Shown piece by piece: positions 2,973 to 26,700 of a stretch of DNA of 59,628 nucleotides. This stretch comes from Oopsacas minuta (Eukaryota > Animalia > Porifera). Positions within the stretch are counted from its first letter, which is position 1. Each line of letters starts with the position of its first letter. Below the pieces are notes generated by a model, which was not told the origin of the DNA, did no database searches, and saw only the letters and a program-made list of their open reading frames with translations. The stretch is taken from the NCBI GenBank assembly GCA_024704765.1, contig JAKMXF010000345.1:204397-264024 (forward strand), given 5' to 3'. The translations under genes were made by a program, and so were the position numbers.

Positions 2973-5900
2973 TTATTGAGCCTTTGAGAAGTATTCGTTC
3001 AATAGTTGGAAGCAGGATACAAAGTGTGTCTAAAGAAAAATGCAGGTAAGAATACAAGCAATGTTTTGTTGAGTGCCTTCCAAGAATAATGAATCTAGTT
3101 TTTTCGTAAAATGTTATTCAATCAATATTATTTGCATTTATATAATTATGCCTTATGTTAGCACAGCTTAAACCTCTTTAACTATGTAACTCAAATGACT
3201 ATTTTATTGTTCAGTATCTTACTAAGGTTAGTTGCCAAATACGAATTGATACCTTAGATTTTGACACGGGGTAACTGACCCTTCAATTCATTTTTTTACA
3301 GTTGTTCTACTTTAGTATAATTGATATAGATATCATCATATTTTTGCCCTCATTTTTACATGTGTTTATTGGTTACGTATATTTCTCCCCCATTCATACC
3401 AATTCATATATCTATATTATTGAACCTCAAATGTTGTCTGTTTGTTTGTTCGTTGTCAAGGAAAGGATTTAAGGTATGCAATTGCAAAATTGTCCAAAAT
3501 ATTTTTTCACTTTTGGGAACATAAAGTAATCAGATTTAAAGATTATGGCAGTATCATGTTTGCTACGGTTAAGATTGTGAGTTTATGTACTCGAGGACCA
3601 TGGGCTTGAGTGTGGACACAATGTCTTCGCAACCGCATAGGACGAGCAAGCGATGCGCACTCGTTATATATAAAATATGTATTGTAACGAACCAGAGTAG
3701 TCACGCTATTCATTCTATCATTCCTCAGCTTCTTGACTATGTGGAAGATGTCAATACGGCCCTTCTCTATGCTATCTTTAATAGCCCTATAAACGGCGTA
3801 CACTACACCACTCTTGCCTGCTCCATCATCACAGTGTATTATGATTGGGTGACTTGGAAACTTCTTACGAAACTCTAACATTATTTCTATAATTTCAACA
3901 ATACTTTCCAAGTTTGGCTCTTCCTTCTCGTTCCACTGATTCGTTATAATTTGGGTGCAAGGTTGGTTACCTTTGTCAACATTATTGTTGATGTCCAATT
4001 TATTGCGAATGAAATGAGGCGTTTTTTCACTTTCCTCACATGTAACATCAAACGAATCTGTTTGGATAGTTTCGCCATATTTTGGCCAGTAAACAATACG
4101 GTGTGATTTTTGGAGTTCAATGAGTTGTAGTTCTTTCTTTGAGCATAACATTACAACTAAACTAGGGGCGAGCATATATATCATTTGATAGAAATCTCGT
4201 TGTGTATGATTTGTGGGATTAATGGTTACAACTATTTCTCCGTTATCTAAAGAACTGGCATTAATGTAATCACCAGGCCAATCAGAGGCTTGTAATACGA
4301 TTCTGTTGCTGTCACATGGTAGGATATCTTTGATTGGATTCTTGTCCTCGTTGGAGGGTTCCAGTGCACTCTTACAAACTGGATCAAAAGCCTTTTCGCA
4401 TTGATAGTTAAGTTCACTGTATTGTTGGAAAAACACAGATACATAACCTTCAGTCTCTGATTGCATGTATAAATTGTATGTCTCTCTGAAGTCTCCTGTG
4501 GGAATTGATGTGCTCCCTAGTATCATTTCAAGGACTGATAGATAAATGAATTTATACTGAGAGAATGTTTGTACCATTTGGGGACGATGCTCCCTCATTT
4601 CATGGACGATACTGTAGATATTGATGGGTTTCGCCTGTTGAACTGCTGCTAAAAGATTGTATAGCGTAATGAACGTGCCTGTACGACCTACACCTGCAGA
4701 ACAATGTACTAAAATGGGTGATCTCGGTTTGACTAAACTTTCCTGAACTTTGGTAACGAACAACAGCAACTCATCATGAAGTGTTGGAACATCATGATCT
4801 GGCCATGCAGTGAAATGAAAGTGTTTTAATTGAGTAACCTTTCCCATCGAGTGAACACTCATCATCCTTATAATATAGCCAATCCTTATCTCTACTTTGT
4901 CTGCAATTATCTCGTATGGCCCACAACCAAACTTTTGGCCTTTTTTCAATGGGAAATATTGTTCGCATTTCTTACGTCCTGATTCAACTAGGTTAGTCAC
5001 CATCACGATATTTGCTACATTCTTTTCTACGATCATTTTCCAAAAATCTTGAAGTGTGTTTTCTTTTGGCGCTTGCGCCGCAATAAATTGTTCTTGGACA
5101 TGAACCCCAGGGATATGACTTGCATTAATATATCCTGTATTCGGATCTTCATCATCACTGAGTGTTAGGATTACGCGAGATTTATCGTAGGGGTACATTA
5201 ATTTGAAGCGATTCTTGATTTTGTTCTCTTCAATCATTGCATGTGTACAGGGATATCTATGTTCTTTTCCACCGAAACTTTCATATTCTTGCTGAAGCGC
5301 ACCTTCTCTTTGCCAAATCTTATTCATATGCATCTTGAAAGCATCTAATGGTATTGGTAACATTCTGGGATCGATAACCTTTGTAGATCTGACTGGAGAT
5401 TGAGTTAATTTACCGACATTTTGATAAAGATCGCTAATCTCAGGCTCTCTCACATTCGGTTTTGTATTTACGGTATCACTTACGCTGTATGCTTTGTTGT
5501 AGTTATCTGATACTGCAGCTTCTTTATATTCTGTAAAATCACTAGCCTTCATTGGTATTTCAGATGAACTAGCTTTAGGGTCATTGTTAAAATAACTGGA
5601 ACTTAACTTGGACATTTTGCCTCGATTTCTTACTATAAAATACATGAGGATAACACCAGCGATGATACATACGAGCAGTAATGATATTATTATCACTGGA
5701 ATTGCAATGACCGCTGCGTTTATCCCTTCAGTTACTGGTCTATCTAGAGGTATTATAGTGAAACGAGCTGTTGTATAGCTGATTCCAGTACTAGTTACTT
5801 GCATCAATGAAAAGTTCCCACTATTAGCATCGGTTAACTCTGATATAATGTAGGTCGACCTGGTTATTGTAGATGTTTCATCAGGAATTATCCAAACACA

Positions 5901-7568
5901 TTCAGATAGACTGCAAGTGAGTGAAATATTTTTTGTTCCCAATGTGATACTGATTTCTTGTGGAGATGGAAACATTGGATTATTTTCATCACTAAATGAC
6001 ATACTAGATTCTTCATAGGTGACTGTTATTGTAGTAGTATCTAGAAATTATGTAAATGTACTACAACCATAGACGTTATACAAATTTATATTGTGGATAT
6101 GTGCGGATCGGATGTCAAACACGTGAAACAAGCAATTTACCTTTGAGAGCTAGTTGTACGCTACCCAACAGTGTTACTGGACTCATCCTGTAGAAACAAC
6201 TCAATGTATGTGCACCAGCTCCCACGTCGTTGAATACTACAATGAAGAGTACTGGATTTGGATATTCAGCACTATATGTCAATGTGTCACCGTCTTCTGC
6301 ACCGTCTGTTGTCCAAAGGATATCATTATCTGCGACCATATTATCTGAATAATAGAGCATTGAGATGGTAGAATCCAGGGTATAATCAACTTGTTGAGAA
6401 GGGTTATCAAAGCTTGTTATTTCAACTAGAAATATAAATATTGAGTAATTTCAATGTCTATAAGTCAATTTGCTCAATAGTTACCTAGGGAATCTGTATT
6501 CACTATAAAGAATGTGTATACCATATCTGAACCAATTTCACAACTATAGTAACCATGTTCATTAGAACTCACAGTCAAACTACTAATCCCAGTTTCAAGA
6601 GAGAATGTTGATGATGAAGTTCTGTCAATTTTCATACCATCCTTCGTAGACATAAAATTCCACGATACACTATCTCCTATATTCGAGATTGAACACTGTA
6701 ACACCGTAGAGTCTTTTAGTACAATTGTTGAATCGTTTGAGATTGAATCAGTTAATGATGTTGAAATTGGATTTGTCACAAAATAACCTAAAGTAATTTC
6801 GTTATATATAATATGTTCAACTCTCGGTTGAAATATTGTTTTAAACCAACCATTTCGGATTAATTCTGCCTGAATCGCAATCACTTCAATTCTATCCCAG
6901 TCCATGATATAGAATTGATACAGTCCAAATAATTCATAATTAAGAGTTGCATAAGATATTGTTTGAGAATAAGAATATGTATCGTTTGGAAGTTTCCATC
7001 TCCCTTGTAGATTTGTTGAGATAGAGAAATCTTCTATTCCAATCAGAAGTTCGAACATATTCGTGTCGGGGTATACAGTACTGAAGGTTTGATCTGATGT
7101 AGATACTGTAATTATTGGAGCTACATAGAGCGTTTGAATGTAAAATAACTGAAAATAGACACTACTAAGCTATGTAAATTGTGTAGTTCCCAAGACGGAT
7201 TACTCAAATTTCACTAGAAATTTCATATTTCATACGGTCTATATGCCAGCCATATGGTCAAATATGTGTAGTTCTAAATTGCAGTTGTCTTCATGGTATG
7301 TTCAATAGGAATATACACTTACTATATATTTCTACTGTATTCAACTGGATGTTAATCCCATTACTAGCACAAGTCAATTGATTACTCTGTTCAGGTGAGT
7401 CACTGCTCCATTCAAAGAGATTTATAGGATTGTTCAATGTGCCTCCACCTCCTATACTCCATATCAAGCTACTCAAGCTATAACTACTATCCATAGGATC
7501 ACAAAGCAGTAATACATCCTCTCTGTCTATACCTACTGTATATGAGTAGGTAGTTTCTGTTACGGAAA
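2973..7568 (-). CDS. Gene D (5'-partial): Ig-like domains + TM + active tyrosine phosphatase D1 + D2 (receptor-type PTP)
   Basis: Exons 7568-7323, 7120-6851, 6787-6485 (canonical Ig C..W..YYSC), 6425-6141, 6040-3693 (Ig-like, TM AVIAIPVIIISLLLVCIIAGVILMYFIV, D1 with KNRF, YINAS, WPDHDVP, HCSAGVGRTG, QTFSQY; D2 with HCDDGAGKSG) and terminal exon 3029-2973 (THFVSCFQLLNEYFSKAQ*). The 5' part is lost at the NNN gap. Confidence 0.92.
3420..3680. repeat. Dispersed repeat (Helitron/HINE-like non-autonomous element) in the last intron of gene D
   Basis: 3424-3492 closely matches 43201-43270; ~3500-3665 matches the reverse complement of ~41806-41965. It carries a CTGT/TTGT microsatellite-like tract and a GC-rich GCGAGC/GCTTGC-type end. 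Family assignment is by resemblance only. Confidence 0.55.
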
Positions 7569-7572
7569 CTAA

Positions 7573-7575
7573 NNN
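7573..7575. other. Assembly gap (NNN)
   Basis: Three N bases. The right side is mid-D2 coding sequence of gene B; the left side is an Ig-like-2 exon with its acceptor, paralogous to 10145-10390 and 1-152. Confidence 0.98.
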
Positions 7576-10500
7576 TCGTTTCAGTAGAATTGATCAAAGT
7601 AGAAACAAAAGGTTCACAATTGATAGGTTCATCCTTCTTAGGCCAGTAACAGACACGATTAGATATTCCACTGAGTATCTTAGCTTTCTCCTTTCTTGTA
7701 GTCAGCATTATCACCATACTAGCTTCTGTTTGATAGATCATTTGTAGGAAATCTAGATATGTCTCTTTAGTTGGATTGATGGTAGCAATGAATTGATAAT
7801 CATGAATATAACTAGCATTGATATAATTACAGTCAAAATGTGGAGAATCTAATACAACTCTGTTTTCATCAAATGGTAGAATGTTTTTGATTGGATTCTT
7901 TTGCATATTTTCCTTTTTCAATGCATCATAACTTTCTGGTATAACAGCCTTCTTAGATTCTTCATTTAACTTTTCAAATTCTACAAAAAATAATGAATCA
8001 TTTCCTATTCCAGATTCTACATACTGTTGATACATAACAGGGAAATCTTTTATAGGTATGAATTTAGCTGTGAATTTGTTTTCTTCCTTTACAGGACTCA
8101 TGGGTGTGTATTTCTCATAAGATAGATCTTCCTTTATTTCTATATAACCACTTTTCTCTTTTTTTGTTACATTTTGGTGTGTAATATTTTCACGTTGAAT
8201 ATTTGACAAATTAGCATAACCTCGTTCATTGGGATTAGTCGGCGCGTCTAGAGTAGTCAACGATGTCTCATCTATCGTCATATACACAGGATTTGTATTT
8301 ACAGATGAGAGATCTATGTACTCCTTAGATTGTGGATTGATTTCCGACAGATTAGCATAACCAGGATTACTTTCATAACCTGTTATATTGGATTTGGATG
8401 GTTTAGGACGTTTAGATAGTTTAGCCTTTGCTGGTCTCCTTCTCTTTACGTATAGAAAGATGAATATTGGAACTAGAATACTTGTGGCTACAATTATAAA
8501 TAGGATCAACAGCAAAATGATTATTATGGCTGCATCTCCAGAATTTGACGGAACAGAATTTGTTGGAGAGATCAGAATTTGTATCGAAATATGTACTGTG
8601 GTATATTCTACACCTTCACTAGTAGAACGAACCAATGAAAAAGTCTCGTTGAAGGTGGGAGTTATTTCCGATATGCTATATGTAGATGCAATTATTGTAT
8701 CTTTTTGATTTGATATCATCCATACACATTCAGGTAGACTGCAGGTTAACGTAATATCTTTTGTTCCTTGAAGTATACTGATTACTTGTGGAGATGGAAA
8801 CATTAGATTATTCACATCACTAAATGACATATTGTATCCTTCATAGCTGACAGTTATTGTAGCAGTATCTAGAAATTATGTAAAGAAACGTCAACAAATA
8901 AGCTATAGAAATATGCATTTTGTTGCTATGTGTGGATCTCACACACACTCAACAAGCAATTTACCTTTGAGAGCTAGTTGTATGCTACCTAACAGTGTAA
9001 CAGGACTCATCCTGTAGAAACAACTGAATGTATGTACACCAGCTCCCACGTCGTTGAATACTACAATCAGTAGAGCTGGATTTGGATACTCAGCACTATA
9101 TGTCAAAATGTCACCGTTTTCTACATTGTCTGTTGTCCAAAGGATATCACTATCTGCGACCATATCATCTGAATAATAGAGCACTGAGACAATTGAATCC
9201 AGAGTATAATCAACTTCTTGAGAAGGGTCATCAAAGCTTGTAATCTCAACTAGAAATACAATTATCAAGTAATATCAATGATGAAAGATGGTCTAACAGT
9301 CTATTACTCAAAGTTACCTAAGGAATCTGTATTCACCACAAAGAATGTGTATACCATATCTGAATTGATTACACAGCTGTAGTAACCAGGTTCATTAGAA
9401 TTCACAGTCAAACTACTAATCCCAGTTTCAATTGTGAATATTGATAATGAAGTTTTCTCTATTCCAATACCATCCTTTGTAGACATAAAATACCACACTA
9501 CACTATCTCCTATATTCGAGATTGAACACTGTAACATTGTAGAGTCATTTAGTACAACTGTTGAATCGTTTGAGATTAAATTTGTTACAACATAGCCTAA
9601 AGTGAAGGTTGTCATTTGTATGTATATGTTAAACTCTCGGTTGAAAATATTTTGATCTAAACTAACCATTTCGTATTAATTCTGCCTGAATCGCAATCAC
9701 TTCAATTCCATCCCAGTTCATGATATAGAATTGATACAGTCCAAATAATTCATAATCAAGAGTTGCATAAGATATTGTTTGAGAAGAAGAATATGTAGCA
9801 TCTGGAAGCTTCCATCTCCCTTGTAGATTTGTTGAGATAGAGAAATCTTCTATTCCAATCAGAAATTCAAACATATTCGTGTCAGGGTATACAGTGTTGA
9901 ATGCCTGATCTGATGTAGATGTAGAAACTGTAATTATTGGAGCTACAGAGAGCATTTGAATGTAAAATAACTGAAAATAGACACTACTAAGCTATGTAAA
10001 TTGTGTATTTCCCAAGACGGATTACTCAAATTTCACTAGAAATTACATATTTTATAGGGTCTATATGCCAGCCATATGGTCAAATATGTGTAGTTCTAAA
10101 TTGCAATTGTCTTTGTGGTATATTAAATAGGAATACACACTTACTATATATTTCTAATGTATTCAACTGGATGTTATTGCCATTACTAGCACAAGTCAAT
10201 TGATTACTCTGTTCAGGTGAGTCACTGCTCCATTCAAAGATATTTATAGGATTGTTCAATGTGCCTCCACCTCCTATACTCCATATCAAGCTACTCAAGC
10301 TATAACTACTATCCATAGGATCACAAAGCAGTAATACATCCTCTCTGTCTATACCTACTGTATATGTGTATGTAGTTTCTGTTACGGCAACTAAAGGAAA
10401 AGAATACTAATAGATAATGATAGGCCATTATAACAATCTAGATTCCAAAGCGTCGTGCCAAATGGTTCAAGAATTGTGAAGGTATGGGTTCCATATATAT

Positions 10501-13500
10501 CTTCCAGACTCTTACCAACACTTCATAATCAATTAGATACCTTTATAACATATTTGATACCATGTCCCCACCACTTACTTGTTGTAGTTTGATTGAACAA
10601 TCCAATTGTATAACTGTTGATCTCGTCTATCTGACACTGATAATATCCTTGTCTAGTATTATATATGTCTAACCAACTGAATCCAGTTTGTGTGCTATTG
10701 TAGGTGGCTGTAAGCTCTTTACTATTTGATAGATCTGAATTTTCTGAAAATTTCCATACAATTGCATTATCCTCGTCTCCTCCACAAGCTAACGTCAGTG
10801 ATTGGTACAAGAATCTGTTTCCACTCATAGATTGAAAGTCTAAACCTTCATTGATAAGTCGACCAAAGTTGGCACCTATATATGATGCACATACATAATT
10901 TTCACCTGAAAACCAAGGAAATTGAATGATTATATACTGACCTGTTGTTACAGATGAAAGTCTCTTGCATAGAAAAGTATTTATCGTGATTTCGCAGCTT
11001 ACAGTCTCCCAACTACCCTCTCCAGCTCTTATTATGTCAACACAATCTTCATCAATAACAGTTGGTGCACTTCCTGTCCAGTTTGTATGACTATATACTG
11101 AGCCATCACTCCAGGTATATGTTCCCTCTACACTCCTATCATTCAATCCTATCCAGCAATTACTCACTGTATCAGGGATAATAGTGTATAAGTAATTATT
11201 CTCTCTCTCTGTTGTAATACTAGTCAAGTCACCACCCCATACAGCACAACTAGATTGAGCATCTAACCAGTTGATTCCATCACTCACTTCATACAATCGA
11301 TAGCAAGATCCATTATAGATAAGATCACATACGCTGGGTGTTGCTGGGATCAAACAAATTCATTATTTTCATTAAACAACTACATGTAATGATCACTTAC
11401 CTGGTTGACTGCAGAAGTAACAATTTCTCATGTCACCACAACCTCGATTAATCCAACCGTTTGATAATACTGCTGCTACATTCCTGTATCTCAATCTAAC
11501 ACAGTCCCAGGCAGCATTTGCATCTCCGGGATTTATTCCAAGAAGCGAATCGAAGTTCCTATAAGTACTGGTACTACCATCTACCCAAACAAATGCACTA
11601 GCATTAGTACCAGCATCTATATCTATATCGTTTAGACCTATAAAACATGTAAAGTATGTGTTTATATCTGTACTACTATAGAACAACAATCTATCTTCTA
11701 CTGCTGACTTTATTGTAGCAAGATTTCCCCTAGTACCCCAGTTATTACATTTCAGTTGAGCACTTAACCAGTCTAAATTAGTAGAATTCGAGATAAATCC
11801 GAAAGAAGTACCACCATAAGTAAATTCTTCATCTGGGATTAAAACTAAAAACATTAGATTATAAATACTTTTCAAACTAAAATTATTTGGTGATAAATAT
11901 CATCTACCAAAAGTATCTGTATTCCGAATAACACAATTGAAGCAACTAATCTTACGTTTTTGCACCCAATTAATACAAATGAATACTCAGAAGTATATAC
12001 CTGGTCGAGGAGGTGCAGATGTAATGTTAATTTGCATAGCTATCACTTCTTCTTGATTCCAGTTGTTAGCAGAATAGAATGTGTATAATCCAGCGTTTTC
12101 TTCCATAAATTCAGCAATTTCTATCGTTGAGTCAGTAGTGTTCATATCTCCTGGAATATTCCATTTTCCAACTAGGTTGATAGATATAGAAATATCTATT
12201 GATTCTAATAGTATAGCAATCATATTCGTGGATGGATATGTTGATGAGAAGCTTTCAGCCAAGAATTGACCATAGAAAATGGATATTTCAGGAACTATAG
12301 ATATGAAAAATGATAAATATATCAGTTAGTAAAGTGTACCATAAATATTGATCGAATACCTGTCACCGAAAGATAGATCATAACGATAGTAGTTCCTTCT
12401 CTCATACAGCTGAATGCTCTAGACTCTGTTGGTAATGTAGCACTCTCAGTATTTACGTGAATTGGGTTATTATACATACTATCCCACATAATTGTACTCA
12501 AACTACCAATCTCAGTAGGATCACACAATAGTAATATATCTTCACTGTCTACCCCTACTAGGTATATGTATGTTTCTCCTTCAACCGCAACTAGATGGAA
12601 AAGTTAGTAGAGAATATTTCAGAAATATCAATTAACAATCTACTCACCTGTTGTTAAAGATGGATCATACAAACCAATTATATAAGATGATGTACTGGTT
12701 TGACACTGATAATATCCTTGTTTGGTAATATTAACTGCTAACCAACTTAATCCAGTTTCTGTACTACCATATGTTGCTGTCGTAACTTCACTGTTTGATA
12801 GATCTGAGTTTTCTGAAAAATTCCATATGATATTATTACTCTGTTCTCCTCCACATGCTAAGGTACGTGAAGTGAACAAGAAAGTGTTTGAGCTAAGCAG
12901 TTGGAAGTCAAATCTTTCGTTAATGAGTTCTCCAAATCTATCAACTGAGAGTAGATAGGAATGAGAAATGTGAAAGAATCTTAGAATTTATATAAAATTA
13001 CAAACCTATTGTTACAGTACTAGTTGAAGCTCTTTTGCATACAAAAGTGTTTAGATTATCCTCACAGTTCACAGTTTCCCAACTAACACCTCCACCTGTG
13101 TTAATCTCAATACAATCGCCATCAGTAGTTGGGGGATTTGTCCAGTTCGCATAGCTAAATGTTGTACCATCAGTCCAGGTATAAGTTCCCTCCTCACTCC
13201 GATCACTCAATCCTATCCAAGAATTATTATTCAATATGATAGTATATAAGTAGTTATTCTCTCTCTCTGTAGTAATACTAGTCAAGTCACCACCCCACAC
13301 AGCACAACTAGATTGAGCATCTAACCAATTGATTCCAGTACTCACTTCAAATATTCGGTAGCATGATCCTTCATAGATGAGATCACATACATTGGGTGTT
13401 GCTATAGGTAAACAAAACACATTTATGATCTAATTCGATATACAAACTTTAGATACACGATATAAGGTTACTCTCGGGTACCCAATGTATTCTTATACCG

Positions 13501-16500
13501 TACATGTTGTTATATAAAGGTCATATTATAGTTGTATTTTGCATAAAATGTACAAATATGTTGTTACCTGGTTTTGTGCAGAAGTGACAATTTATTAGAA
13601 TATTACAAAAATGATTAATCCATCCATTTGATATAGGACCAGCACCTCCTGGTTTATATCTGAAACTAACACAATCATAGTCAGCTGTATCTGCAGGGTA
13701 TGTCGCTCCTGATGTACCGAAGTTCCTATATGTACTTGTGTTGCCATCTACCCACACAAATGCACTACCATCAGTACCAGCATCTACAAGTATATCATTC
13801 AGGCCAATATAGCATCTAAAGTATGTTTGTATATCCGTTATACTATAATATAATAAATCGTCTTCTACTTCTGACTTGATTGTAGCAAGATTTCCTCCCC
13901 ATAAGATACAGCTGAGTTGTGCAGTTAGCCAGTCTATAGAAGGTGAATTGGTGAAATATCCAAATGTTGTTCCATCAAATGTAAATTCTTCTTCTGGATC
14001 CATAACTAAGATAGATTATGTATTTGTATAAAAAATCGCTACTTTCTGAGGTAAGTGTATTCAGCGTGTATATATTCAAGAGCCTTTTCATGTATGTTAA
14101 TTTTACAATATAATTCATAGAATATTTGTTTTAAGAATATTTTACCTGTAAGAGCAGGTGATGATGTAATGTTAATCTGCATAGCAATCACCTCTTCTTG
14201 ATCCCAGTTGTCATCAGTATAGAATGTATATATTCCTTCATCAGCTTGTATGAATTCTGAGATAACTAAAGTGGAACTTGTAGTATCCACACCTTCTGGA
14301 TCAGTCCATTTTCCCTCTAGGGTAATGGTGAGAGAAACATTTTTTGTTTCTAATGCGATATCAATCACATTCATTGATGGATATGTTAATGAGAAGCTTT
14401 CAACCAGAAACTGACCGTAGTGAACGGACATTTCGGGAACTAAAGCAACAGTTTGTATATATGAAGATAGCTTTTATTGAAATGATATGAAATTCACCTG
14501 TAATTGAAAGATTGATAGTAACGATGGTAGTCCCTTCTCTCATACAGCTAAATTCTGTAGACTCTGTTGGTAATGTAGCACTCTCAGTATTTACGTGAAT
14601 TGGGTTATTATACATACTATTCCACATAATTGTACTCAAACTACCAATCTCAGTAGGATTACACAACAGTAATACAGTGTCTCTGTCTACTCCTACAATA
14701 TATATGTATGTTTGTCCTTCAACCGCAACTAGATAGATAAGTTGGTGTTATCAAGACTGTAAAATATATTAAAATATATTAAAGTGATCTACTTACCTGT
14801 TGTTAAGGATGGATCATACAATCCAATCGTATAAGTTAATGAATTGACCTCGCACTGATAGTAACCTTGTTTGGTAATATCAACTGCTAACCAGCTCCAT
14901 CCAGCTTCCATATTCTCATAGGTTGGCGTTTCTGGTTGACTAGATGATAGATCTGAATTCTCTGAAAATAGCCATGTAATGGCTATATTCTCTTCTCCTC
15001 CATAAGCTAATGTATGTGGGGTGAACAAAAATGTGTTTTCACTAATTGTTTCAAAGTTTAATCTTCCATTAGTAAGTTGTCCAAATCCTCCAACTAAAGC
15101 ACATATACATATGCTATATCAAATTTCTAGCGTTATAGTATAAATAATATATACTGACCTATTGTTACAGATGAATTTCTTTTACATAGAAAAGCATTTG
15201 TCGTTGTTTCACAGTCCACGGTTTCCCAATTACCTCCTCCAGCACTTGTTATTTCTACACAATCTTCATTGCCAGCATTCGGTGGGCTATTTGGCCAATT
15301 AGTATAAGTAGATGTTGAATCATCAGTCCAGGTATATGTTCCATCGTTATTATCTCTATCATTCAATCCTATCCAGCAATTACTCACTGTGTCAGGGATA
15401 ATAGTGTATAAGTAGTTACTATCTCTCTCTGTAGTAATACTAGTCAAATCACCACCCCATATAGCACAACTAGATTGTGCATCTAGCCAGTTGATTCCAT
15501 CACTCACTTCGAAGACTCGATTGCAAAATCCATTATAGAACAGATCACATCCTTGTGAGTTACCTACAAATTTTAGACGATAAAGTACCAGAAATACAGT
15601 TATAGTAACTAATAAGTAATAAGACTTTTGATAAATATCAATTACCTTGTTTATTACAGATGTAACAATTTGTAGTATCAGTACAAGCTTGATTTGCCCA
15701 ACCAGTTGATAATTCACCAGTAGATTTGTATCTGTTTCTGCCACAGTCCCAAGTGGCTGTTGCTACAGGATATGATTGTCCAAGTGTATCGAAGTTCCTA
15801 TAAGTACTGTTACTACCATCTACCCATACAAATGCATTAGCATCAGAACCAGCATCATTTTCTATATCATTTAGACCTATCCAACATGAAAAGTATGTAT
15901 TTATATCTGTACTACTATAGAACAGTAAGCTATCTTCTATTGCTGAGTTGATTGTAGCAAGATTTCCTCCCCAGTTCAGGCAATCAAGTTGACTAGTAAA
16001 CCATGTTGTATCAGTGGTAGTGAAGAACCCAATTGCTGAATTATCGTATGTTAGTTCAATATCTGGAGTTCCTATAGGAATACATTTTATTAAATTCGAT
16101 TAGTTTTCGGTATGATCGAAAGTTTTTCAACTGATTATATCGCATTTGAGTGGTATGGCAGATAACATACAATTCCCCAGGAAAAAATGATAATATAACA
16201 TACCCATACCTGTCACTGTAGTTGAAGATGTTAATTGAATTTGGATGATACATACTTCATCATTATCCCAGTTGTTGGTATAGAACTTGTATAATCCACC
16301 GTTTTGTGATGAAAATTTTGGAATAGTTAAAGTAGATCCTGTAGAATTCGTATCATCTGGAAGAGTCCAACTACCATCAATATTGATTGACAGGATAACA
16401 TCTTGTACTGCTAAAGGAACTGCTAGCGTATTCACCTCTGTACAGAGTAATGTAAAGTTTTCAGCTGGTACAACACCGTAACTTATGGTTAACAAGGGGG

Positions 16501-21689: not shown

Positions 21690-23780
21690 GTAAATATTGT
21701 ATATATTACGTCTGTAGGTAAGCACTTCAGTAAATATTGTGGAATCCGCCTATTAGCAACCGTTTTCATCGACATGGCCATAAAGTGATGGTTTGTATGG
21801 TAATTTGTGTGTATAATAGCCCAATTGCTTAATAATAGGACAGTGCTTACAGGAAAAGTATTGGCTACACAACTAGATATATCTGTCGATCACGGTTGAA
21901 GATTTATGATCATAATGAAGAGGAACACAAATTTGTATTTGTTATTTGTATCTAAATTGCATTACGAAGAAGCCATAATAATGCAATTAATCTTTGGCTT
22001 GGATTCTGGACACATCCAACCTATATTGATAAACAACTTGGTTATTCAAACTGAGGTACACTATTTTATTTTGCTGGTTTGTCATCTTTGCCGATTCATA
22101 TACCACATTTACTCAAATAGTAGCCCCTCCCCGTACAATCATCATAATCGCCCGCTCAATTTGGGTGACGTACACAATCATTGCTGTGATGAAACTGACA
22201 CAATAACTACGATGGACTAACATAATGACTTTCATATTAATCATATACACTGGCTAACTTGATACTAGAATCTTATAAATGTAACCTAAAACTTTTCATT
22301 ATCTTCTCTAATTTATAATTCCATGATTTATATTGCCACGTTCAAAAAATGGAATATTCCCTATCCTATAGGAAGAAACAATGATTATGAACCTGTTATC
22401 CATCTTCTATGATTGCATTTACGTTTCCATATTTTTCCTGCTCATGGTTGTGTGGGCACGAATATGCACTTTTTTAGACACTTTGTGAAAGTGCACCCAT
22501 ATGGTAGCACATTAGTAGGTTATTATTGGATCATTATGCTCTGCTAACGTACGTAAATATTAATTGATGATGCAATTATTAGCAATTATTAAACAATCTT
22601 TTCATGATAATTTAGTTAACATACACTTAGCTATGAATTTCTTAACTAGAAATTCATTGTTCGTCTTATCTGGAAATTCATAGTAATCATGTTTGTATTA
22701 AGAGCTTTCACTGTATTTCTCAAATCCACCAAAATTTGGTAAGCAAGTAGAATATGAAACTGATTCACATGACAAACAATCATAACTATCATTAAACATG
22801 TCTCATTGTCTATCAGAACACAAGAATATACAACTAGTAATTTATGTATATACGTATATGTATAACAACAAAAACAAGAAACATAATAGAAAAGTATCCA
22901 CAAATATTTAAACATCACGATGTATATTAGAGATGAATAGAACAATATTCGTTTAGAAGCGAATAGCAAGTTGTATAACATGCCTAGAAGAGGAATAGAT
23001 AATAGAAATATAGTGTGAAGAATTGGTATAAGGGTATTATAGATGGACTCGCGTTCTGTCGAATTATAATTACTTATCGAATAGAATATGGAAACATTCA
23101 AACTAGTCATACAAAGTAATACTAGATAATTGGGCTGTAAAATGTGACAACATTGGTGGACTTGAAGGGAACGGTTTGCCCTGCACTTCCACAGTTTTCC
23201 CGTTTACCCCACAAAGTGATGTTATTGCATTATTCGATAGTTCTCTATCTTATGGATACGTTGTAAAATTTTAGAGTTCTATCATTATTTAGCACTTTGA
23301 CTAGCATTCCATAGCCATGTCTTCAAACCATCTAGCCATAAGGGCAAAGTACACTCGAATAGTTATATCAATTATTGTATAAATAGTATCTATTACATGT
23401 TTTTAACATGATGTATACATTAAATAGCCCTATTTGTAATGTTTTTATGATATTTGCACCCAAACGTTAATTTCCCCACACCGCTGTGAAGTAGATTTGG
23501 CCCGCCAGAGATCTACACACGATCCAGATTCGCAGTAAAAAATATCAAATAGTTCCGACCACTGGGAGAAGTATAAGAATTGTAAGGTATACTTTCCCTT
23601 TGAATAGATAGGTATAGAAATATTCGCAAGGAATTAAAATAGAAAACTGATACCGAGAATCCAAAAAGAATCTTTGAGATATTTCCGTAGTGGTGTGAAA
23701 TCATTGAAATATATCGTCAAAACAATATATTTTCATATAAACGAAGATAGGAATGTATATGACAGTTATCAAATACTTAC

Positions 23781-26700
23781 CAAGGTAGGAACATTGTTCA
23801 TTCTTTGTTTACGCAAGTTCTTAACAACATTGAAGATGTTAATTGATTTTCTTATGTTAAGTTCTCTGATAGAATTCAACACTGTCATTATGATGCCAGT
23901 CTTAGAGATACCATCTTCACAATGTATAATAATAGGAACATTATTGGAGTCTTGTTTCTGTTTCATAATTCTGTTCAGAAGGGCGATAGCACACACTACA
24001 TCATTCACTGTACCATCTTCATTCCATATTGGAGATATACACTGAGTGAATGAGTGTTCCTTTCCTGCTAAAGTATTCTTCAAACATATTTCCTGTTTCA
24101 CAAATGCATTCTTTTCAGTCGAATTTATCAAAGTAGAAACAAAAGGTCCACAATTGATAGGTTCATCCTTCTTAGGCCAGTAACAGACACGATTAGATAT
24201 TCCACTGAGTATCTTAGCTTTCTCCTTTCTTGTAGTCAGCATTATCACCATACTAGCTTCTGTTTGATAGATCATTTGTAGGAAATCTAGATGTGTCTCT
24301 TTAGTTGGATTGATGGTAGCAATGAATCGATAACTTTCTAACCAACTAGCATTGATAAAATTACAGTCAAAGTGTGTAGAATCTAATACAACCCTGTTTT
24401 CATCAAATGGTAGAATGTTTTTAATTGGATTCTTTTGAAAATTTTCCTCTTTCAATGCCTCTCTACTTTCTGGTACAACAGCCTTCTTAGATTCTTCATT
24501 TAACTTTTCAAATTCCACAGAAAATAATGAATCATTTCCTATTCCAGATTCTACATACTGTCCATACATTGTAGGAAATTCTGTTATTGGTATGAATTTT
24601 GCTATGAATCTTTCTTCCTTTACCGAACTAATGGATGGGTAGTTTTCATAAGATAGCTCTTCCTTCATTTCTAAATAGCCACTTTTCTCTTTTTTTGTTG
24701 CATTTTGGTTTGGAATATTTTCACGTTGAATATTTGACAAATTAGCATAACTTCGTTCATTGGGATTAGTGGGTGCGTCTAGAGTAGTTAATGATGTCTC
24801 ATCTACCGTCATATACTCAGGATTTGTATTTACAGATGAGAGATCTATGCACTCTTTAGGTTGTGGATTGATTTCCGATAAATTTGCATAACCAAGATTA
24901 CTTTCATTACCTGTTATATAGGATTTGGAGGGTTTAGGACGTTTAGATACTTTTGCCTTTGTTGGTCTTCTTCTCTTTACGTGTAGAAAGATGAATATTG
25001 GAACTAGAATACTTGTAGCTACAATTATACATGTGATCGATAATAGCACAATGATTATTATCGGTAGTAATGCACTGTTTGCTGCTGCTTCTGTTAGAGT
25101 TTGTATAGAAATATGTACTGTGGTATATTCTACGCCAGAACTTGTAGAACGAACCAATGAGAAAGTCTCTTTAAAGTTAGAAGGTATTTCAGATATGCTA
25201 TATGTAGATGCAATGATTGTATCTTTTTCATTTGATATCATCCATACACATTCAGGTAGAGTGCAGGTTAACGTAATATCTTTGGTTCCTTGATGTATAC
25301 TGATTACTTGTGGAGATGGAAATAATTCATTACTAATATCACTTGTGGTAAAGGTGTACCCTTCATAACTGATTGTTACTTCTACTGTATCTGTAAATAT
25401 ATGATAGATAATTTAATGATTTAATATATAATATCAACAAACCTTTGATTGCTAGCTGGAGATTTCCTAGAGAAGTGACTGGACTCATCCTATAGAACGA
25501 AGTTATTGTATGTAAACCTGCTCCCACATTAGAGAATACTGCAATTAATAACACTGGATTTGGGTACTCAATACTGTATTCCATATTTTCCCCATCGTTT
25601 ACAGTGTCTGTTGTCCAACGTATTTTAGTATCTGGAATTTCTGTGTTTGAATAGTAGAGTCTATCAATAATAGAACCAACAGTATAGTTCACTTGTAAAG
25701 GAATGTTAAAGTTGGTTATTTCTTCTAGAAAAACACACACAGTAAATATGGATCGCATATTGGTATATTCCCTGTGTAGAATGCGAAGATATTACTATTA
25801 AATCGCTATTACCTATTCCATCAATTGTTACAGTAATATTGATCTGTATTGCACAGACTTCTAGCCCATCCCAGTTGGTAATATATAACTTATATACGCC
25901 ATTATTCTGTGATGTGAAAGTTGAAATTGCTAGAGTAAAGAATTGATAGCTTCCATCAGGTAGCATCCATCTACCCTCAATGTTATTTGAAATAGAAATG
26001 TTCTTGATACCAATAGGAATTTCTATATTATTCATGACCGGGTAAACTGATGAAACTTTTCCAATAATGAGATCACCATATTGGAGGATTATTTGTGGTA
26101 CTAGAGGAAATAATGTGAGGATAATTGGATAACAATATTACTTTACGTAGTAAGACTACCTCTATAATTAATTTTGTTTTTGATATTTCTTCTCCATCTC
26201 TCGAACAATTGATGCTATAGTAACCGATTGACTTATCACCAATCATTTTGTATATGTTGATTGGATTGGGAAGAGTATCACTACCCTCTACAGACCATAT
26301 TAACAGAGACAGGTTACCACTATCCATCGGATCGCATAGCAGTAATACATTCTGTCTGTCTACTCCTACTGTATAGTTGTATGTAGTTTCAGATACAGCA
26401 ACTAGATGGGAGATTAGAGTGATAAATGAGTTAGGCTAATCAAAGAGTGCCAAACATGCTGACCTGTTGTTAAGGATGGATTGTATAACCCAATCGTATA
26501 AGTTAATGAATTGGCTTGACACTGATAATATCCTTGTTGGGTAATATCAGCTGCTAGTCAGCTCCATCCAGCTTCCATATTCTCATAGGTTGCTAGTAGT
26601 GTTTGACTAGGTGATAGATCTGAATTCTCTGAAAATATCCATATAATTTCAGTTTCCTCTTCTCCTCCATAAACTAATGTACGTGAAGTGAACAAGAATG

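What the first reader, a model, noticed from the sequence alone, without database searches (positions are those of the whole stretch)
8085..8400. D1 is replaced by a ~100-aa tail with eight tyrosines, including a canonical-spacing ITAM
Seen in gene B after the TM: GYES, NPGYANL, EYIDL-SSVNTNPV-YMTI, GYANL, SGYIEI, SYEKYTPM. E-YIDL-x8-YMTI (8323-8273) fits the ITAM consensus D/E-x0-2-YxxL/I-x6-8-YxxL/I. SGYIEI fits the ITIM consensus S/I/V/L-x-YxxI/L/V. YAN (twice) fits the Grb2 YxN motif, YTPM the PI3K YxxM motif, and NPGY/NPVY the NPxY motif. The sequence rejoins homology with gene D only at the D1-D2 linker (FIPIKDF vs SIPTGDF). Inference: a receptor PTP converted into a phosphotyrosine docking scaffold.
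Basis: partly seen in the sequence, partly recalled or inferred. Interest (0 to 1): 0.82.

Follow-up and report, generated by a model that had tools for sequence, protein, structure and literature searches.

The report
Conserved tyrosine-motif tail in sponge receptor
A glass-sponge surface receptor descended from a tyrosine phosphatase has lost its working enzyme domain and carries a floppy inner segment with tyrosine docking motifs, including an ITAM-like pair, that are kept across about 100 related genes; this suggests immune-style docking signalling in a very early-branching animal, but no biochemistry exists yet.

Summary
Gene B (minus strand, last exon 8868-7576) encodes a TM helix, a 129-aa tail with eight tyrosines, then a D2-type dead phosphatase domain. 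The ITAM-like string lies exactly at 8323-8273.

The motifs are not chance. In 99-111 relatives from at least three other assemblies, the best-kept tail positions are the tyrosines and their specificity residues:
- YMTIDE: Y in 95%.
- Y[VT]PM: Y 86%, M 88%.
- Two YxN[LI] motifs: N 80-83%.
- KEYI[DE]L: Y 70%.

The pair YxxL-x7/8-YxxI occurs in 56 of 101 tails, against 1.3 in shuffles. AlphaFold predicts the tail as disordered. One run holds spliced contigs of the gene.

- The ITIM-like SGYIEI and GYES are not conserved.
- The nearest paralog A has Cys at the first ITAM tyrosine.
- The middle of the tail matches the juxtamembrane of active D1+D2 relatives (profile P about 8e-4). D1 was therefore deleted rather than replaced.
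- Gene B's 3' end is hidden by an assembly gap.

B is a mosaic, with a D-like outside and an A-like inside, as in paired receptors. Phosphorylation and SH2 binding remain untested. The scan noted this family before on other DNA of this genome (s1-205312, s1-284899, s1-266710). I rate it a new variant of a known kind.

The parts
7576..8868 (-). Assembled part of the last exon of gene B: end of the last Ig-like module, TM helix, tyrosine tail, and the N-terminal 160 aa of a D2-type pseudophosphatase domain
   Evidence: Continuous ORF. The spliced joint 8868/8965 has GT..AG ends on the minus strand in run X3. Pfam Y_phosphatase matches residues 308-413 at E 2e-20.
8447..8533 (-). Transmembrane helix (about A100-V128), followed by the basic stop-transfer KRRRP
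   Evidence: Hydrophobic run. The same segment of paralog A is modelled as a helix with pLDDT 89-96.
8060..8446 (-). 129-aa cytoplasmic tail (K129-F257) with 8 tyrosines; predicted disordered
   Evidence: In the AlphaFold model of paralog A with a 73-row alignment, pLDDT is about 30 across the tail. The tail has no PDB or Pfam match.
8375..8377 (-). Y152 (GYES): a tyrosine private to gene B
   Evidence: The family column is K/R. Paralog A has N here.
8348..8359 (-). Y158-A-N-L: first YxN[LI] motif (Grb2-SH2 type)
   Evidence: Y in 72 of 111 relatives and N in 82 of 111. Kept in paralog A.
8273..8323 (-). ITAM-like pair E-YIDL-x8-YMTI (Y171, Y183); the second half is part of the family's best-conserved block NPxYMTIDETS
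   Evidence: Coordinates. Y171 is kept in 70% of relatives and Y183 in 95%; both are present in 68 of 99. Spacer lengths are 7 (37 members), 8 (22) and 5 (7). The regex matches 56 of 101 tails against 1.3 in shuffles.
8207..8218 (-). Y205-A-N-L: second YxN[LI] motif
   Evidence: Y in 82 of 111 and N in 88 of 111. It is collinear with YQN[IV] in the juxtamembrane of D1+D2 relatives.
8135..8152 (-). S-G-Y229-I-E-I: ITIM-like string, not conserved
   Evidence: Y is kept in only 41-44% of relatives, and the -2 column is mostly gap, K or E. Paralog A reads SGYLEM. Contigs of the same sample read I230K and I232M (8142 A>T, 8135 T>C).
8099..8119 (-). Y238-E-K-Y241-T-P-M: conserved Y[VT]PM (p85-SH2 type YxxM)
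   Evidence: Y241 is kept in 86%, M244 in 88% and Y238 in 55% of relatives. Paralog A has YPSI.
7576..8059 (-). N-terminal part of the D2-type pseudophosphatase domain, starting at the linker FIPIKDF
   Evidence: 42.8% identity to the D2 of gene D, against a weaker match to D1. The complete domain of paralog A best matches PTP-alpha residues 322-569, which is D2. In the tree the D1-less domains group with sponge D2 domains at SH-aLRT 100.
7573..7575 (.). Assembly gap (NNN) hiding the rest of gene B's D2 and the 5' exons of gene D
   Evidence: Loose ends to the left of 7576 in runs X3 and X4 continue gene B in frame, as in paralog A.
8692..10394 (-). Membrane-proximal ectodomain exons and introns of gene B, 86.7% identical in DNA to gene D (5864-7572)
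   Evidence: blastn. Gene B matches gene A only over 7576-9156, so B is a mosaic of a D-like outside and an A-like inside.
23772..25073 (-). Paralog gene A: TM, tail and complete D2-type pseudophosphatase domain (HCEDGISKTG); Cys (TGC, 24851-24849) replaces the first ITAM tyrosine
3546..6002 (-). Gene D last exon: same type of outer end and TM, a juxtamembrane with YQNV, an active-looking D1 (VHCSAGVGRTG) and a D2 (HCDDGAGKSG)

Best explanation
Gene B encodes a type-I receptor with C-type-lectin and Ig-like modules outside. It belongs to a large glass-sponge family that arose from PTP-alpha/epsilon-like two-domain receptor phosphatases by one loss of the catalytic D1 domain.

What remains inside the cell is a 129-aa disordered segment followed by a catalytically dead D2 domain. 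The segment is an ordered array of short tyrosine motifs kept by selection: GYxN[LI], KEYI[DE]L-x7/8-YMTI(DETS), YxN[LI], often YExI, and Y[VT]PM.

The likely mechanism is as follows. Ligand-driven clustering lets Src-type kinases phosphorylate these tyrosines. The phosphotyrosines then recruit SH2/PTB proteins. YxN would bind a Grb2-like adaptor. YxPM would bind a p85-like subunit. The YxxL-x7/8-YxxI pair would bind a tandem-SH2 protein such as a Syk/Shark-like kinase or an SHP-like phosphatase.

The neighbouring gene D has a nearly identical membrane-proximal outer part but an active D1. It would give the opposite, dephosphorylating output, as in paired receptors.

Shown here: the sequence, family-wide conservation, predicted disorder, D2 origin, mosaic structure and spliced transcripts. 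Inferred: phosphorylation, the identity of the binding partners and the sign of the signal. I put about 0.65 on the tail being a phosphotyrosine docking array. I put about 0.35 on the YIDL/YMTI pair working as a true two-pronged ITAM.
For: - In 99-111 relatives, the most conserved tail columns are the tyrosines and their specificity positions: I186 97%, Y183 95%, E188 93%, T185 88%, M244 88%, Y241 86%, N207 83%, N160 80%, Y205 77%, Y158 and Y171 70%. Overall identity of the tails to gene B is only 22-47%.
- Tyr-majority columns are more conserved than the other columns (mean 0.65 versus 0.46, Mann-Whitney P=0.007).
- Motif counts in 101 tails against shuffles: ITAM regex in 56 members versus 1.3; YxN 197 versus 65; YxxM 105 versus 21; Yxx[LIMVF] 508 versus 156.
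- Asn at +2 of both YxN[LI] motifs is better kept than the +3 residue. This fits SH2 reading rather than sorting.
- Tail residues have pLDDT about 30, between a confident TM helix and a confident PTP fold.
- Run X3 has contigs spliced at 8868/8965 and 9249/9318, and exact contigs lie over the tail.
- The D1-less PTP domains form one clade (SH-aLRT 99) and sit with sponge D2 domains (100). The best PDB match is the D2 of PTP-alpha.
- B and D share 86.7% DNA identity, introns included, up to just before the TM, and nothing after it. The same pattern occurs in another assembly.
- A tail profile finds only this family among 1.84 billion representatives (17 hits).
- Background: Syk and Shark families are common in metazoans (PMC4342544, PMC10253181).
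- An unverified scan note reports a Syk-like kinase in this genome, and other notes report many SH2 proteins.
Against: - There is no evidence of phosphorylation or of any binding partner.
- The first ITAM tyrosine is Cys in the closest paralog A, and about 30% of relatives lack it.
- A distant subgroup (P0097-P0105) keeps YMTIDE but not the ITAM spacing, and another subgroup has spacing 5.
- Every motif except a bare YxN also fits the phosphorylation-independent YxxPhi or NPxY sorting patterns.
- The shuffle statistics across paralogs are inflated by shared ancestry.
- dN/dS between A and B in the tail is 0.39, based on few changes.
- The conserved block NPxYMTIDETSxxPLE is longer than a usual SH2 site, so another kind of partner is possible.
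- The kind of run X3 is not on record; RNA is inferred from the splice joints.
Confidence: 0.62

Rival explanations
1. The tyrosine motifs are phosphorylation-independent trafficking signals. YxxPhi would be read by the AP-2 mu2 subunit and NPxY by PTB-type clathrin adaptors, driving endocytosis or phagocytic uptake of a lectin receptor. The tail would not be a signalling scaffold.
For: YIDL, YMTI, YANL and YTPM all fit YxxPhi, and NPxY is present in 47 of 101 tails. The ectodomain has four C-type lectin modules, as endocytic lectin receptors do. From my own knowledge, not checked here: the single-pseudophosphatase receptor IA-2/PTPRN uses a tyrosine-based sorting motif.
Against: Six to eight conserved motifs in a fixed order are far more than sorting needs. 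Asn at +2 of both YxN[LI] motifs (80-83%) is better kept than the +3 hydrophobic residue (57-59% Leu plus 13-16% Ile), the opposite of what AP-2 binding requires. Met at +3 of Y[VT]PM is 88% invariant although any bulky residue would serve for sorting. The 7/8-residue spacing of two motifs is kept in 59 of 68 members that have both tyrosines.
Confidence: 0.15
2. The tail is a docking array, but the 'ITAM' is only two independent single-SH2 sites that happen to lie 7-8 residues apart. YMTIDE is an old motif shared with the active phosphatase relatives, and KEYIDL is a later addition. No Syk-type two-pronged reader would be involved.
For: Y183 (95%) is far better conserved than Y171 (70%), and 26 of 99 members keep only Y183. 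Paralog A lost Y171 by a single TAC>TGC change while keeping all else. D1+D2 relatives carry Y[MS]xLD[EQ] alone at the collinear place. Distant subgroups have other spacings.
Against: Where both tyrosines exist, the spacer is 7 or 8 in 59 of 68 members, the canonical ITAM distance. An acidic residue precedes the first tyrosine in most members (50 of 101 fit the strict pattern, against 0.5 expected). A scan note (unverified) reports a Syk-like kinase in the genome.
Confidence: 0.35
3. The tail serves mainly as a built-in substrate or decoy for phosphatases. It would be dephosphorylated by, or compete for, the active D1 of the paired neighbour (gene D type), or it would fold back on its own D2 domain. 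The D1-less receptors would then act as regulators of the active ones rather than as recruiters of SH2 proteins.
For: D1-less and D1+D2 genes alternate in tandem and share their ectodomains, so they would be co-clustered by the same ligand. D2 pseudophosphatase domains are known protein-recruiting modules, for example PTPRK D2 with Afadin (PMC9640194).
Against: The D2 P-loop has Glu-Asp and Lys in place of Ser-Ala and Arg (HC[EQ]DGISKTG), and the KNRY tyrosine is missing. Phosphotyrosine binding by D2 is therefore unlikely. AlphaFold does not dock any tail segment on D2. The distinct +1 to +3 specificities (N, PM, xxL/I) point to different SH2 classes rather than to one phosphatase.
Confidence: 0.1
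4. The motifs are chance matches in a tyrosine-rich, fast-evolving linker of a decaying gene copy.
For: Short motifs are common. Within gene B alone, YxN, YxxM and ITIM are not significant (P 0.12-0.25). B and A differ at several tyrosines.
Against: Conservation holds across about 100 relatives from at least three other assemblies, at only 22-47% overall tail identity to gene B. The reading frame is open and spliced transcripts exist.
Confidence: 0.03

Closest known systems
Receptor-type PTP-alpha / PTP-epsilon (R4 subtype)
   Same: The homologous active relatives (gene D and its kin) find PTP-alpha/epsilon as their nearest named proteins. The retained domain best matches the D2 of PTP-alpha and PTP-epsilon. 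From my own knowledge, not checked here: vertebrate PTP-alpha is itself a docking protein through its phosphorylated C-terminal YANF site, which binds Grb2 and Src SH2.
   Different: D1 is absent. The ectodomain is large (four lectin modules plus Ig-like modules) instead of short. The docking tyrosines lie between the TM and D2 rather than at the C-terminus, and there are 6-9 of them.
ITAM-bearing receptors and adaptors (CD3-zeta, FcR-gamma, DAP12; Drosophila Draper; Hydractinia Alr proteins)
   Same: Two YxxL/I motifs lie 7-8 residues apart, with a preceding acidic residue, in the cytoplasmic tail of a type-I membrane protein. Draper and the cnidarian Alr tails show that invertebrates use or carry ITAMs (PMC9546547). 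Like Draper, the tail combines NPxY with YxxL/I.
   Different: There is no sequence homology. The first tyrosine is dispensable in about 30% of members. The motif sits inside a longer multi-motif array and upstream of a pseudophosphatase domain. No binding data exist.
Transmembrane adaptor proteins (LAT, SIT, PAG, NTAL)
   Same: A disordered cytoplasmic segment with many tyrosines in YxN and YxxL/I/M contexts acts as an SH2 docking platform.
   Different: Those proteins have almost no ectodomain and no phosphatase-like domain. The sub-threshold Pfam SIT hit (24.9 bits against a cut-off of 27.6) depended on the TM helix and vanishes for the tail alone.
IA-2 / phogrin (PTPRN, PTPRN2), single-pseudophosphatase receptors
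   Same: A type-I membrane protein whose only PTP domain is catalytically inactive, with a functional juxtamembrane segment.
   Different: From my own knowledge, the IA-2 domain is D1-like and the protein is a secretory-granule protein. Here the domain is D2-derived, and the juxtamembrane carries an SH2-type motif array.
Vertebrate paired activating/inhibitory receptors (KIR, Ly49, SIRP, PILR families)
   Same: Neighbouring genes have near-identical ectodomains (86.7% DNA identity, introns included) and unrelated signalling ends, in tandem multigene arrays.
   Different: The 'inhibitory' partner carries the phosphatase itself instead of an ITIM that recruits one. The 'activating' partner carries its own ITAM-like tail instead of borrowing an adaptor. 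Function is untested.

Membership tests
ITAM (immunoreceptor tyrosine-based activation motif) | Two YxxL/I motifs separated by 6-8 residues | tested here: met
   YIDL-x8-YMTI at 8323-8273. The spacer is 7 or 8 in 59 of 68 relatives that have both tyrosines.
ITAM (immunoreceptor tyrosine-based activation motif) | Acidic residue 0-2 positions before the first tyrosine | tested here: met
   E170 lies directly before Y171. The strict pattern occurs in 50 of 101 tails, against 0.5 in shuffles.
ITAM (immunoreceptor tyrosine-based activation motif) | Lies in the cytoplasmic tail of a membrane receptor or adaptor | tested here: met
   It lies 42 aa after the TM helix and its basic stop-transfer. Lectin and Ig exons lie upstream.
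ITAM (immunoreceptor tyrosine-based activation motif) | Both tyrosines retained among relatives as a functional unit | tested here: inconclusive
   Both are present in 68 of 99 relatives. Y183 is kept in 95% but Y171 in only 70%. Paralog A has Cys (TGC), and distant subgroups lack the spacing.
ITAM (immunoreceptor tyrosine-based activation motif) | [quoted passage not shown] | not testable with these tools
   Only background literature (PMC4342544, PMC10253181) and an unverified scan note of a Syk-like kinase in this genome.
ITIM ([SIVL]xYxx[ILV]) | Pattern present and conserved | tested here: not met
   SGYIEI fits in gene B. However, Y229 is kept in only 41-44% of relatives, the -2 column is mostly gap, K or E, paralog A reads SGYLEM, and contigs of the same sample read I230K/I232M.
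Grb2-type SH2 site (pYxN) | Tyr with Asn at +2, conserved | tested here: met
   Two YANL motifs. Y158 is kept in 70% with N160 in 80%; Y205 in 77% with N207 in 83%. There are 197 YxN in 101 tails, against 65 in shuffles. Binding was not tested.
p85/PI3K-type SH2 site (pYxxM) | Tyr with Met at +3, conserved | tested here: met
   YTPM in gene B; the family consensus is Y[VT]PM with Y in 86% and M in 88%. Paralog A has YPSI. Binding was not tested.
NPxY (PTB-domain / endocytosis motif) | Asn-Pro-x-Tyr, conserved | tested here: inconclusive
   NPGY and NPVY are present in gene B. The first is not conserved. For the second, N180 is kept in 74% and Pro in about 40%. NPxY occurs in 47 of 101 tails, against 4.5 in shuffles.
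Receptor PTP D2-type pseudophosphatase domain | PTP fold that groups with membrane-distal D2 domains | tested here: met
   Pfam Y_phosphatase. The best PDB match is PTP-alpha residues 322-569. In the tree, D1-less domains plus sponge D2 domains sit on one side of a branch at SH-aLRT 100. The AlphaFold PTP fold has pLDDT 80-95.
Receptor PTP D2-type pseudophosphatase domain | Catalytic signature HCxxGxxR[ST] degenerate | tested here: met
   HCEDGISKTG in paralog A and HC[EQ]DGISKTG in nearly all relatives: Arg becomes Lys and Ser-Ala becomes Glu/Gln-Asp. The P-loop of gene B itself lies in the assembly gap.
SIT transmembrane adaptor (Pfam PF15330) | Score above the Pfam gathering threshold | tested here: not met
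   24.9 bits against a cut-off of 27.6, with the TM included. None of the 76 tails alone gives a hit.
Paired receptors | Near-identical ectodomains with alternative signalling ends in neighbouring genes | tested here: met
   B 8692-10394 is 86.7% identical to D 5864-7572, with no similarity in the cytoplasmic parts. In L001 of another assembly the identity is 87-89%. Opposite signalling was not tested.

The most novel reading that the evidence does not exclude
Glass sponges run a true ITAM-based paired-receptor system. Dozens of lectin/Ig receptors would signal through a canonical YxxL-x7-YxxI motif read by a Syk/Shark-like tandem-SH2 kinase. Each would be opposed by a twin with the same ectodomain and a built-in active phosphatase. 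The activating/inhibitory receptor logic of vertebrate innate immunity would then predate the split of sponges from other animals, or have been invented independently there.
Probability: 0.22. Interest if true: 0.85.

Novelty: new variant of a known kind. Interest (0 to 1): 0.6.

Why it matters
ITAM and SH2 docking tails are well known in vertebrates. They have been reported in flies (Draper), a cnidarian (Hydractinia Alr) and a tunicate. I found no description of them in sponges, nor of a receptor phosphatase turned into a docking scaffold by losing D1.

The evidence here goes beyond a pattern match in one gene. An ordered motif array is kept across about 100 relatives, in several glass-sponge assemblies. 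It is paired gene by gene with active-phosphatase twins that share the ectodomain.

If the motifs are phosphorylated and read as predicted, this gives a directly testable model of how an early-branching, syncytial animal converts recognition by lectin/Ig receptors into opposing phosphotyrosine signals. It would also date the origin of the ITAM/tandem-SH2 module.

Tried and rejected
- Pairwise BLASTP of the tail against gene D's juxtamembrane gave E=1.4. Only the profile-profile comparison showed the collinear motifs (P about 8e-4, HH probability only 13-25%).
- The Pfam SIT near-hit was an artefact of the TM helix, because no tail alone matches.
- The tail has no PDB sequence match at E up to 10.
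- A tail profile searched against 1.84 billion representatives found only 17 clusters. All are members or fragments of this same family, so no link to any outside family emerged.
- AlphaFold did not dock any tail segment onto D2, which gives no support for an in-cis interaction.
- dN/dS between A and B is based on too few changes to be informative (tail 0.39, D2 part 0.70).
- I could not check for Syk/Shark, Grb2, p85 or SHP genes in this genome. No tool scans it, and I had no tool-derived query sequence, so I did not type one from memory. Only unverified scan notes and general literature bear on this.
- The four runs are Logan contigs of one sample with no recorded library type. They cannot give expression level or strand.
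Full report
**What is there.** The window is AT-rich animal DNA. Named hits and an earlier scan note assign the genome to the glass sponge Oopsacas minuta. On the minus strand, one long exon of gene B (8868 down to 7576) encodes four parts in order:
- the end of an Ig-like module;
- a TM helix (8533-8447);
- a 129-aa segment (K129-F257, 8446-8060);
- the first 160 residues of a PTP domain.

E-YIDL-x8-YMTI lies at 8323-8273, as stated. Upstream exons carry four C-type lectin domains and Ig-like modules.

The exon stops at an NNN gap (7573-7575). Loose ends of contigs from two runs continue gene B in frame, with the same residues as paralog A. The gene is therefore cut by the assembly, not by biology. 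Beyond the gap the sequence jumps into ectodomain exons of gene D.

**Is it more than chance?** In gene B alone, shuffling the tail gives these results:
- ITAM pattern: P=0.016, or 0.005 with the acidic residue.
- Two NPxY: P=0.0016.
- Six Yxx[LIMVF]: P=0.00035.
- YxN, YxxM and ITIM: not significant on this tail alone.

The stronger test is conservation. A word search with the complete paralog A returned more than 100 proteins of the same build: TM, tail and one PTP domain with HC[EQ]DGISKTG. They come from at least three different ENA assemblies, plus NCBI O. minuta entries.

Aligned to gene B, the tails are only 22-47% identical. Even so, the best-kept columns are the tyrosines and their specificity residues:

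| Position | Kept in relatives |
|---|---|
| I186 | 97% |
| Y183 | 95% |
| E188 | 93% |
| T185 | 88% |
| M244 | 88% |
| Y241 | 86% |
| N207 | 83% |
| N160 | 80% |
| Y205 | 77% |
| Y158 | 70% |
| Y171 | 70% |

The family consensus reads GYxNL ... KEYIxL-x7-YMTIDETSMIPLE ... YxNL ... YExI ... PYExY[VT]PM.

The ITAM pattern occurs in 56 of 101 tails, against 1.3 in shuffles. Where both tyrosines exist, the spacer is 7 (37 members) or 8 (22 members). Genes B and A carry a one-residue insertion that makes it 8. Shared ancestry inflates such counts, so I treat them as a description of conservation and not as probabilities.

**What is not conserved.**
- Y152 (GYES) is private to B.
- The ITIM-like SGYIEI has its Tyr in 41-44% of relatives, no conserved -2 residue, and reads SGYLEM in paralog A. 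Contigs of the same sample read I230K and I232M there.
- Gene B lacks a tyrosine that 67% of relatives have at position 218 (YExI).
- Paralog A (82% identical, 25343-23772) has TGC (Cys) where B has TAC at the first ITAM tyrosine.
- 26 of 99 relatives keep only the second tyrosine.
- A distant subgroup (P0097-P0105) keeps YMTIDE, YxN and YxxM but not the ITAM spacing, and another subgroup has spacing 5.

**Origin of the tail.** The PTP domain is D2-derived:
- It is closer to gene D's D2 than to its D1.
- It best matches the D2 of PTP-alpha and PTP-epsilon among solved structures.
- In a tree, 40 D1-less domains form one clade (SH-aLRT 99). Together with the sponge D2 domains they sit on one side of a branch (100), away from the D1 domains. 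This points to one ancient D1 loss followed by expansion.

Its P-loop (Glu/Gln-Asp for Ser-Ala, Lys for Arg) and the altered KNRY and WPD regions argue against catalysis and against phosphotyrosine binding.

The active D1+D2 relatives (gene D; P0121-P0147) also have a roughly 90-aa juxtamembrane. It carries three conserved tyrosines in the same order: Y[MS]xLD[EQ], YQN[IV] and Y[EQ]E[IA]. A profile-profile alignment pairs these with YMTIDE, YxNL and YExI of the tail (P about 8e-4 for the single comparison, HH probability only 13-25%).

The middle of the tail is thus probably the old juxtamembrane. The first GYxNL, the KEYI[DE]L half of the ITAM and the C-terminal Y[VT]PM are additions of the D1-less clade. 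'D1 deleted and juxtamembrane elaborated' describes it better than 'D1 replaced'.

**Physical state and expression.** AlphaFold, run on paralog A with a 73-row alignment, gives a confident TM helix, pLDDT about 30 over the whole tail, and a confident PTP fold. No tail segment is docked on the domain. The tail has no Pfam or PDB match.

Four runs of one sample hold the stretch. One of them (X3) has contigs that skip three introns with GT..AG ends on the minus strand, including the joint into the tail exon (8868/8965). It also has exact contigs over the tail. This indicates spliced RNA, although the library type is not on record.

**Context.**
- Gene B is 86.7% identical in DNA to gene D over 8692-10394 (D 5864-7572), introns included. 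The similarity stops just before the TM.
- Gene B matches gene A only from 9156 downstream. B is therefore a mosaic of a D-like outer end and an A-like inner end.
- In another assembly (L001), a D1-less gene and its D1+D2 neighbour share 87-89% identity over all ectodomain exons and introns, and nothing inside the cell.

This is the structure of paired receptors. Earlier reports of this scan described it on other DNA of the same genome (s1-205312, s1-284899, s1-266710).

**How it most likely works.** I commit to a phosphotyrosine docking array (about 0.6-0.65). Clustering by ligand would allow phosphorylation of the tail. Different motifs would then recruit different SH2/PTB proteins, while the twin with an active D1 erases phosphotyrosine.

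Three observations favour SH2 reading over pure sorting:
- Asn at +2 is better kept than the +3 residue in both YxN[LI] motifs.
- Met is kept at +3 of Y[VT]PM.
- The spacing of the YxxL/YxxI pair is fixed at 7 or 8.

Whether that pair is a true two-pronged ITAM is open (about 0.35), because the first tyrosine is often lost. Sorting signals (0.15), a substrate or decoy role toward the paired phosphatase (0.1) and chance (0.03) are the rivals. Phosphorylation, partners and signal direction are all inferred.

**Comparison and novelty.** The closest homologues are R4 receptor phosphatases (PTP-alpha/epsilon). The closest functional analogues are:
- ITAM receptors, including Draper and the Hydractinia Alr tails (PMC9546547);
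- the Botryllus FcoR tails (PMC12582321);
- transmembrane adaptors such as LAT and SIT;
- IA-2-type single-pseudophosphatase receptors;
- vertebrate paired receptors.

Literature searches found no description of this sponge family, or of a D1-less receptor phosphatase with an ITAM-like tail. A tail profile finds only this family among 1.84 billion representative proteins.

It is built from known kinds of parts, and the scan has met the family before. I therefore rate it a new variant of a known kind, with interest 0.6.

Noticed in passing
window 7573-7575: A three-N assembly gap joins the middle of gene B's D2 domain to ectodomain exons of gene D. Loose contig ends on both sides (7572 'behind', 7576 'before') show different continuations, so sequence of unknown length is missing here.
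   Followed up: partly
window 8692-10394 vs 5864-7572; 7576-9156 vs 24110-25634: Gene B is a mosaic. Its membrane-proximal ectodomain exons and introns are 86.7% identical to gene D, and its TM/tail/D2 part is 82.8% identical to gene A. The two tracts overlap in 8692-9156. This suggests gene conversion or exon shuffling between paired receptors.
   Followed up: partly
window 8135 and 8142: Contigs of runs X2-X4 read T>C and A>T here, changing SGYIEI to SGYKEM. This is either an allele or a near-identical extra copy not in the assembly.
   Followed up: no
window 23775-23789 and about 23561 downward: In gene A the ORF end '...PTLVSI*' is read-through into an intron: a GTAAGT donor follows PTL, and all relatives called as ORFs end at the same 'VPTLVSI'. 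A candidate last mini-exon (WSELFDIFY...) starts near 23561. It was not confirmed with RNA.
   Followed up: partly
P0236 (ENA protein): This relative carries a D1+D2-type juxtamembrane (…HAYYELKD) directly followed by the full D1-less tail (GYANL, KEYIDL-x7-YMTID, YQNL, YEEI, YVPM). It is a natural chimera that bears on how the tail arose.
   Followed up: no
P0240 (ENA protein): The same tail plus D2 endodomain is joined to a fibronectin-III-type ectodomain instead of lectin/Ig modules. The endodomain therefore behaves as a module combined with different outer parts.
   Followed up: no
P0115 (NCBI, 'Ladderlectin [Oopsacas minuta]'): The annotated protein has lectin domains, a TM and a tail about 85% like gene B's, with an intact YIDL-x7-YMTI. 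It ends abruptly inside the tail, so it is probably a truncated gene model of another family member.
   Followed up: no
L001 3826-9193 vs 12373-17416: In another assembly (ERZ25072730), a D1-less gene and the next D1+D2 gene share 87-89% DNA identity across all ectodomain exons and introns, but nothing in the cytoplasmic exon. D1+D2 and D1-less genes alternate along the contig.
   Followed up: partly
window 3546-6002 (gene D) and P0121-P0147: Active D1+D2 relatives keep three juxtamembrane tyrosine motifs of their own (Y[MS]xLD[EQ], YQN[IV], Y[EQ]E[IA]). Gene D itself has YSVS (no +3 Leu/Ile) and YQNV.
   Followed up: partly
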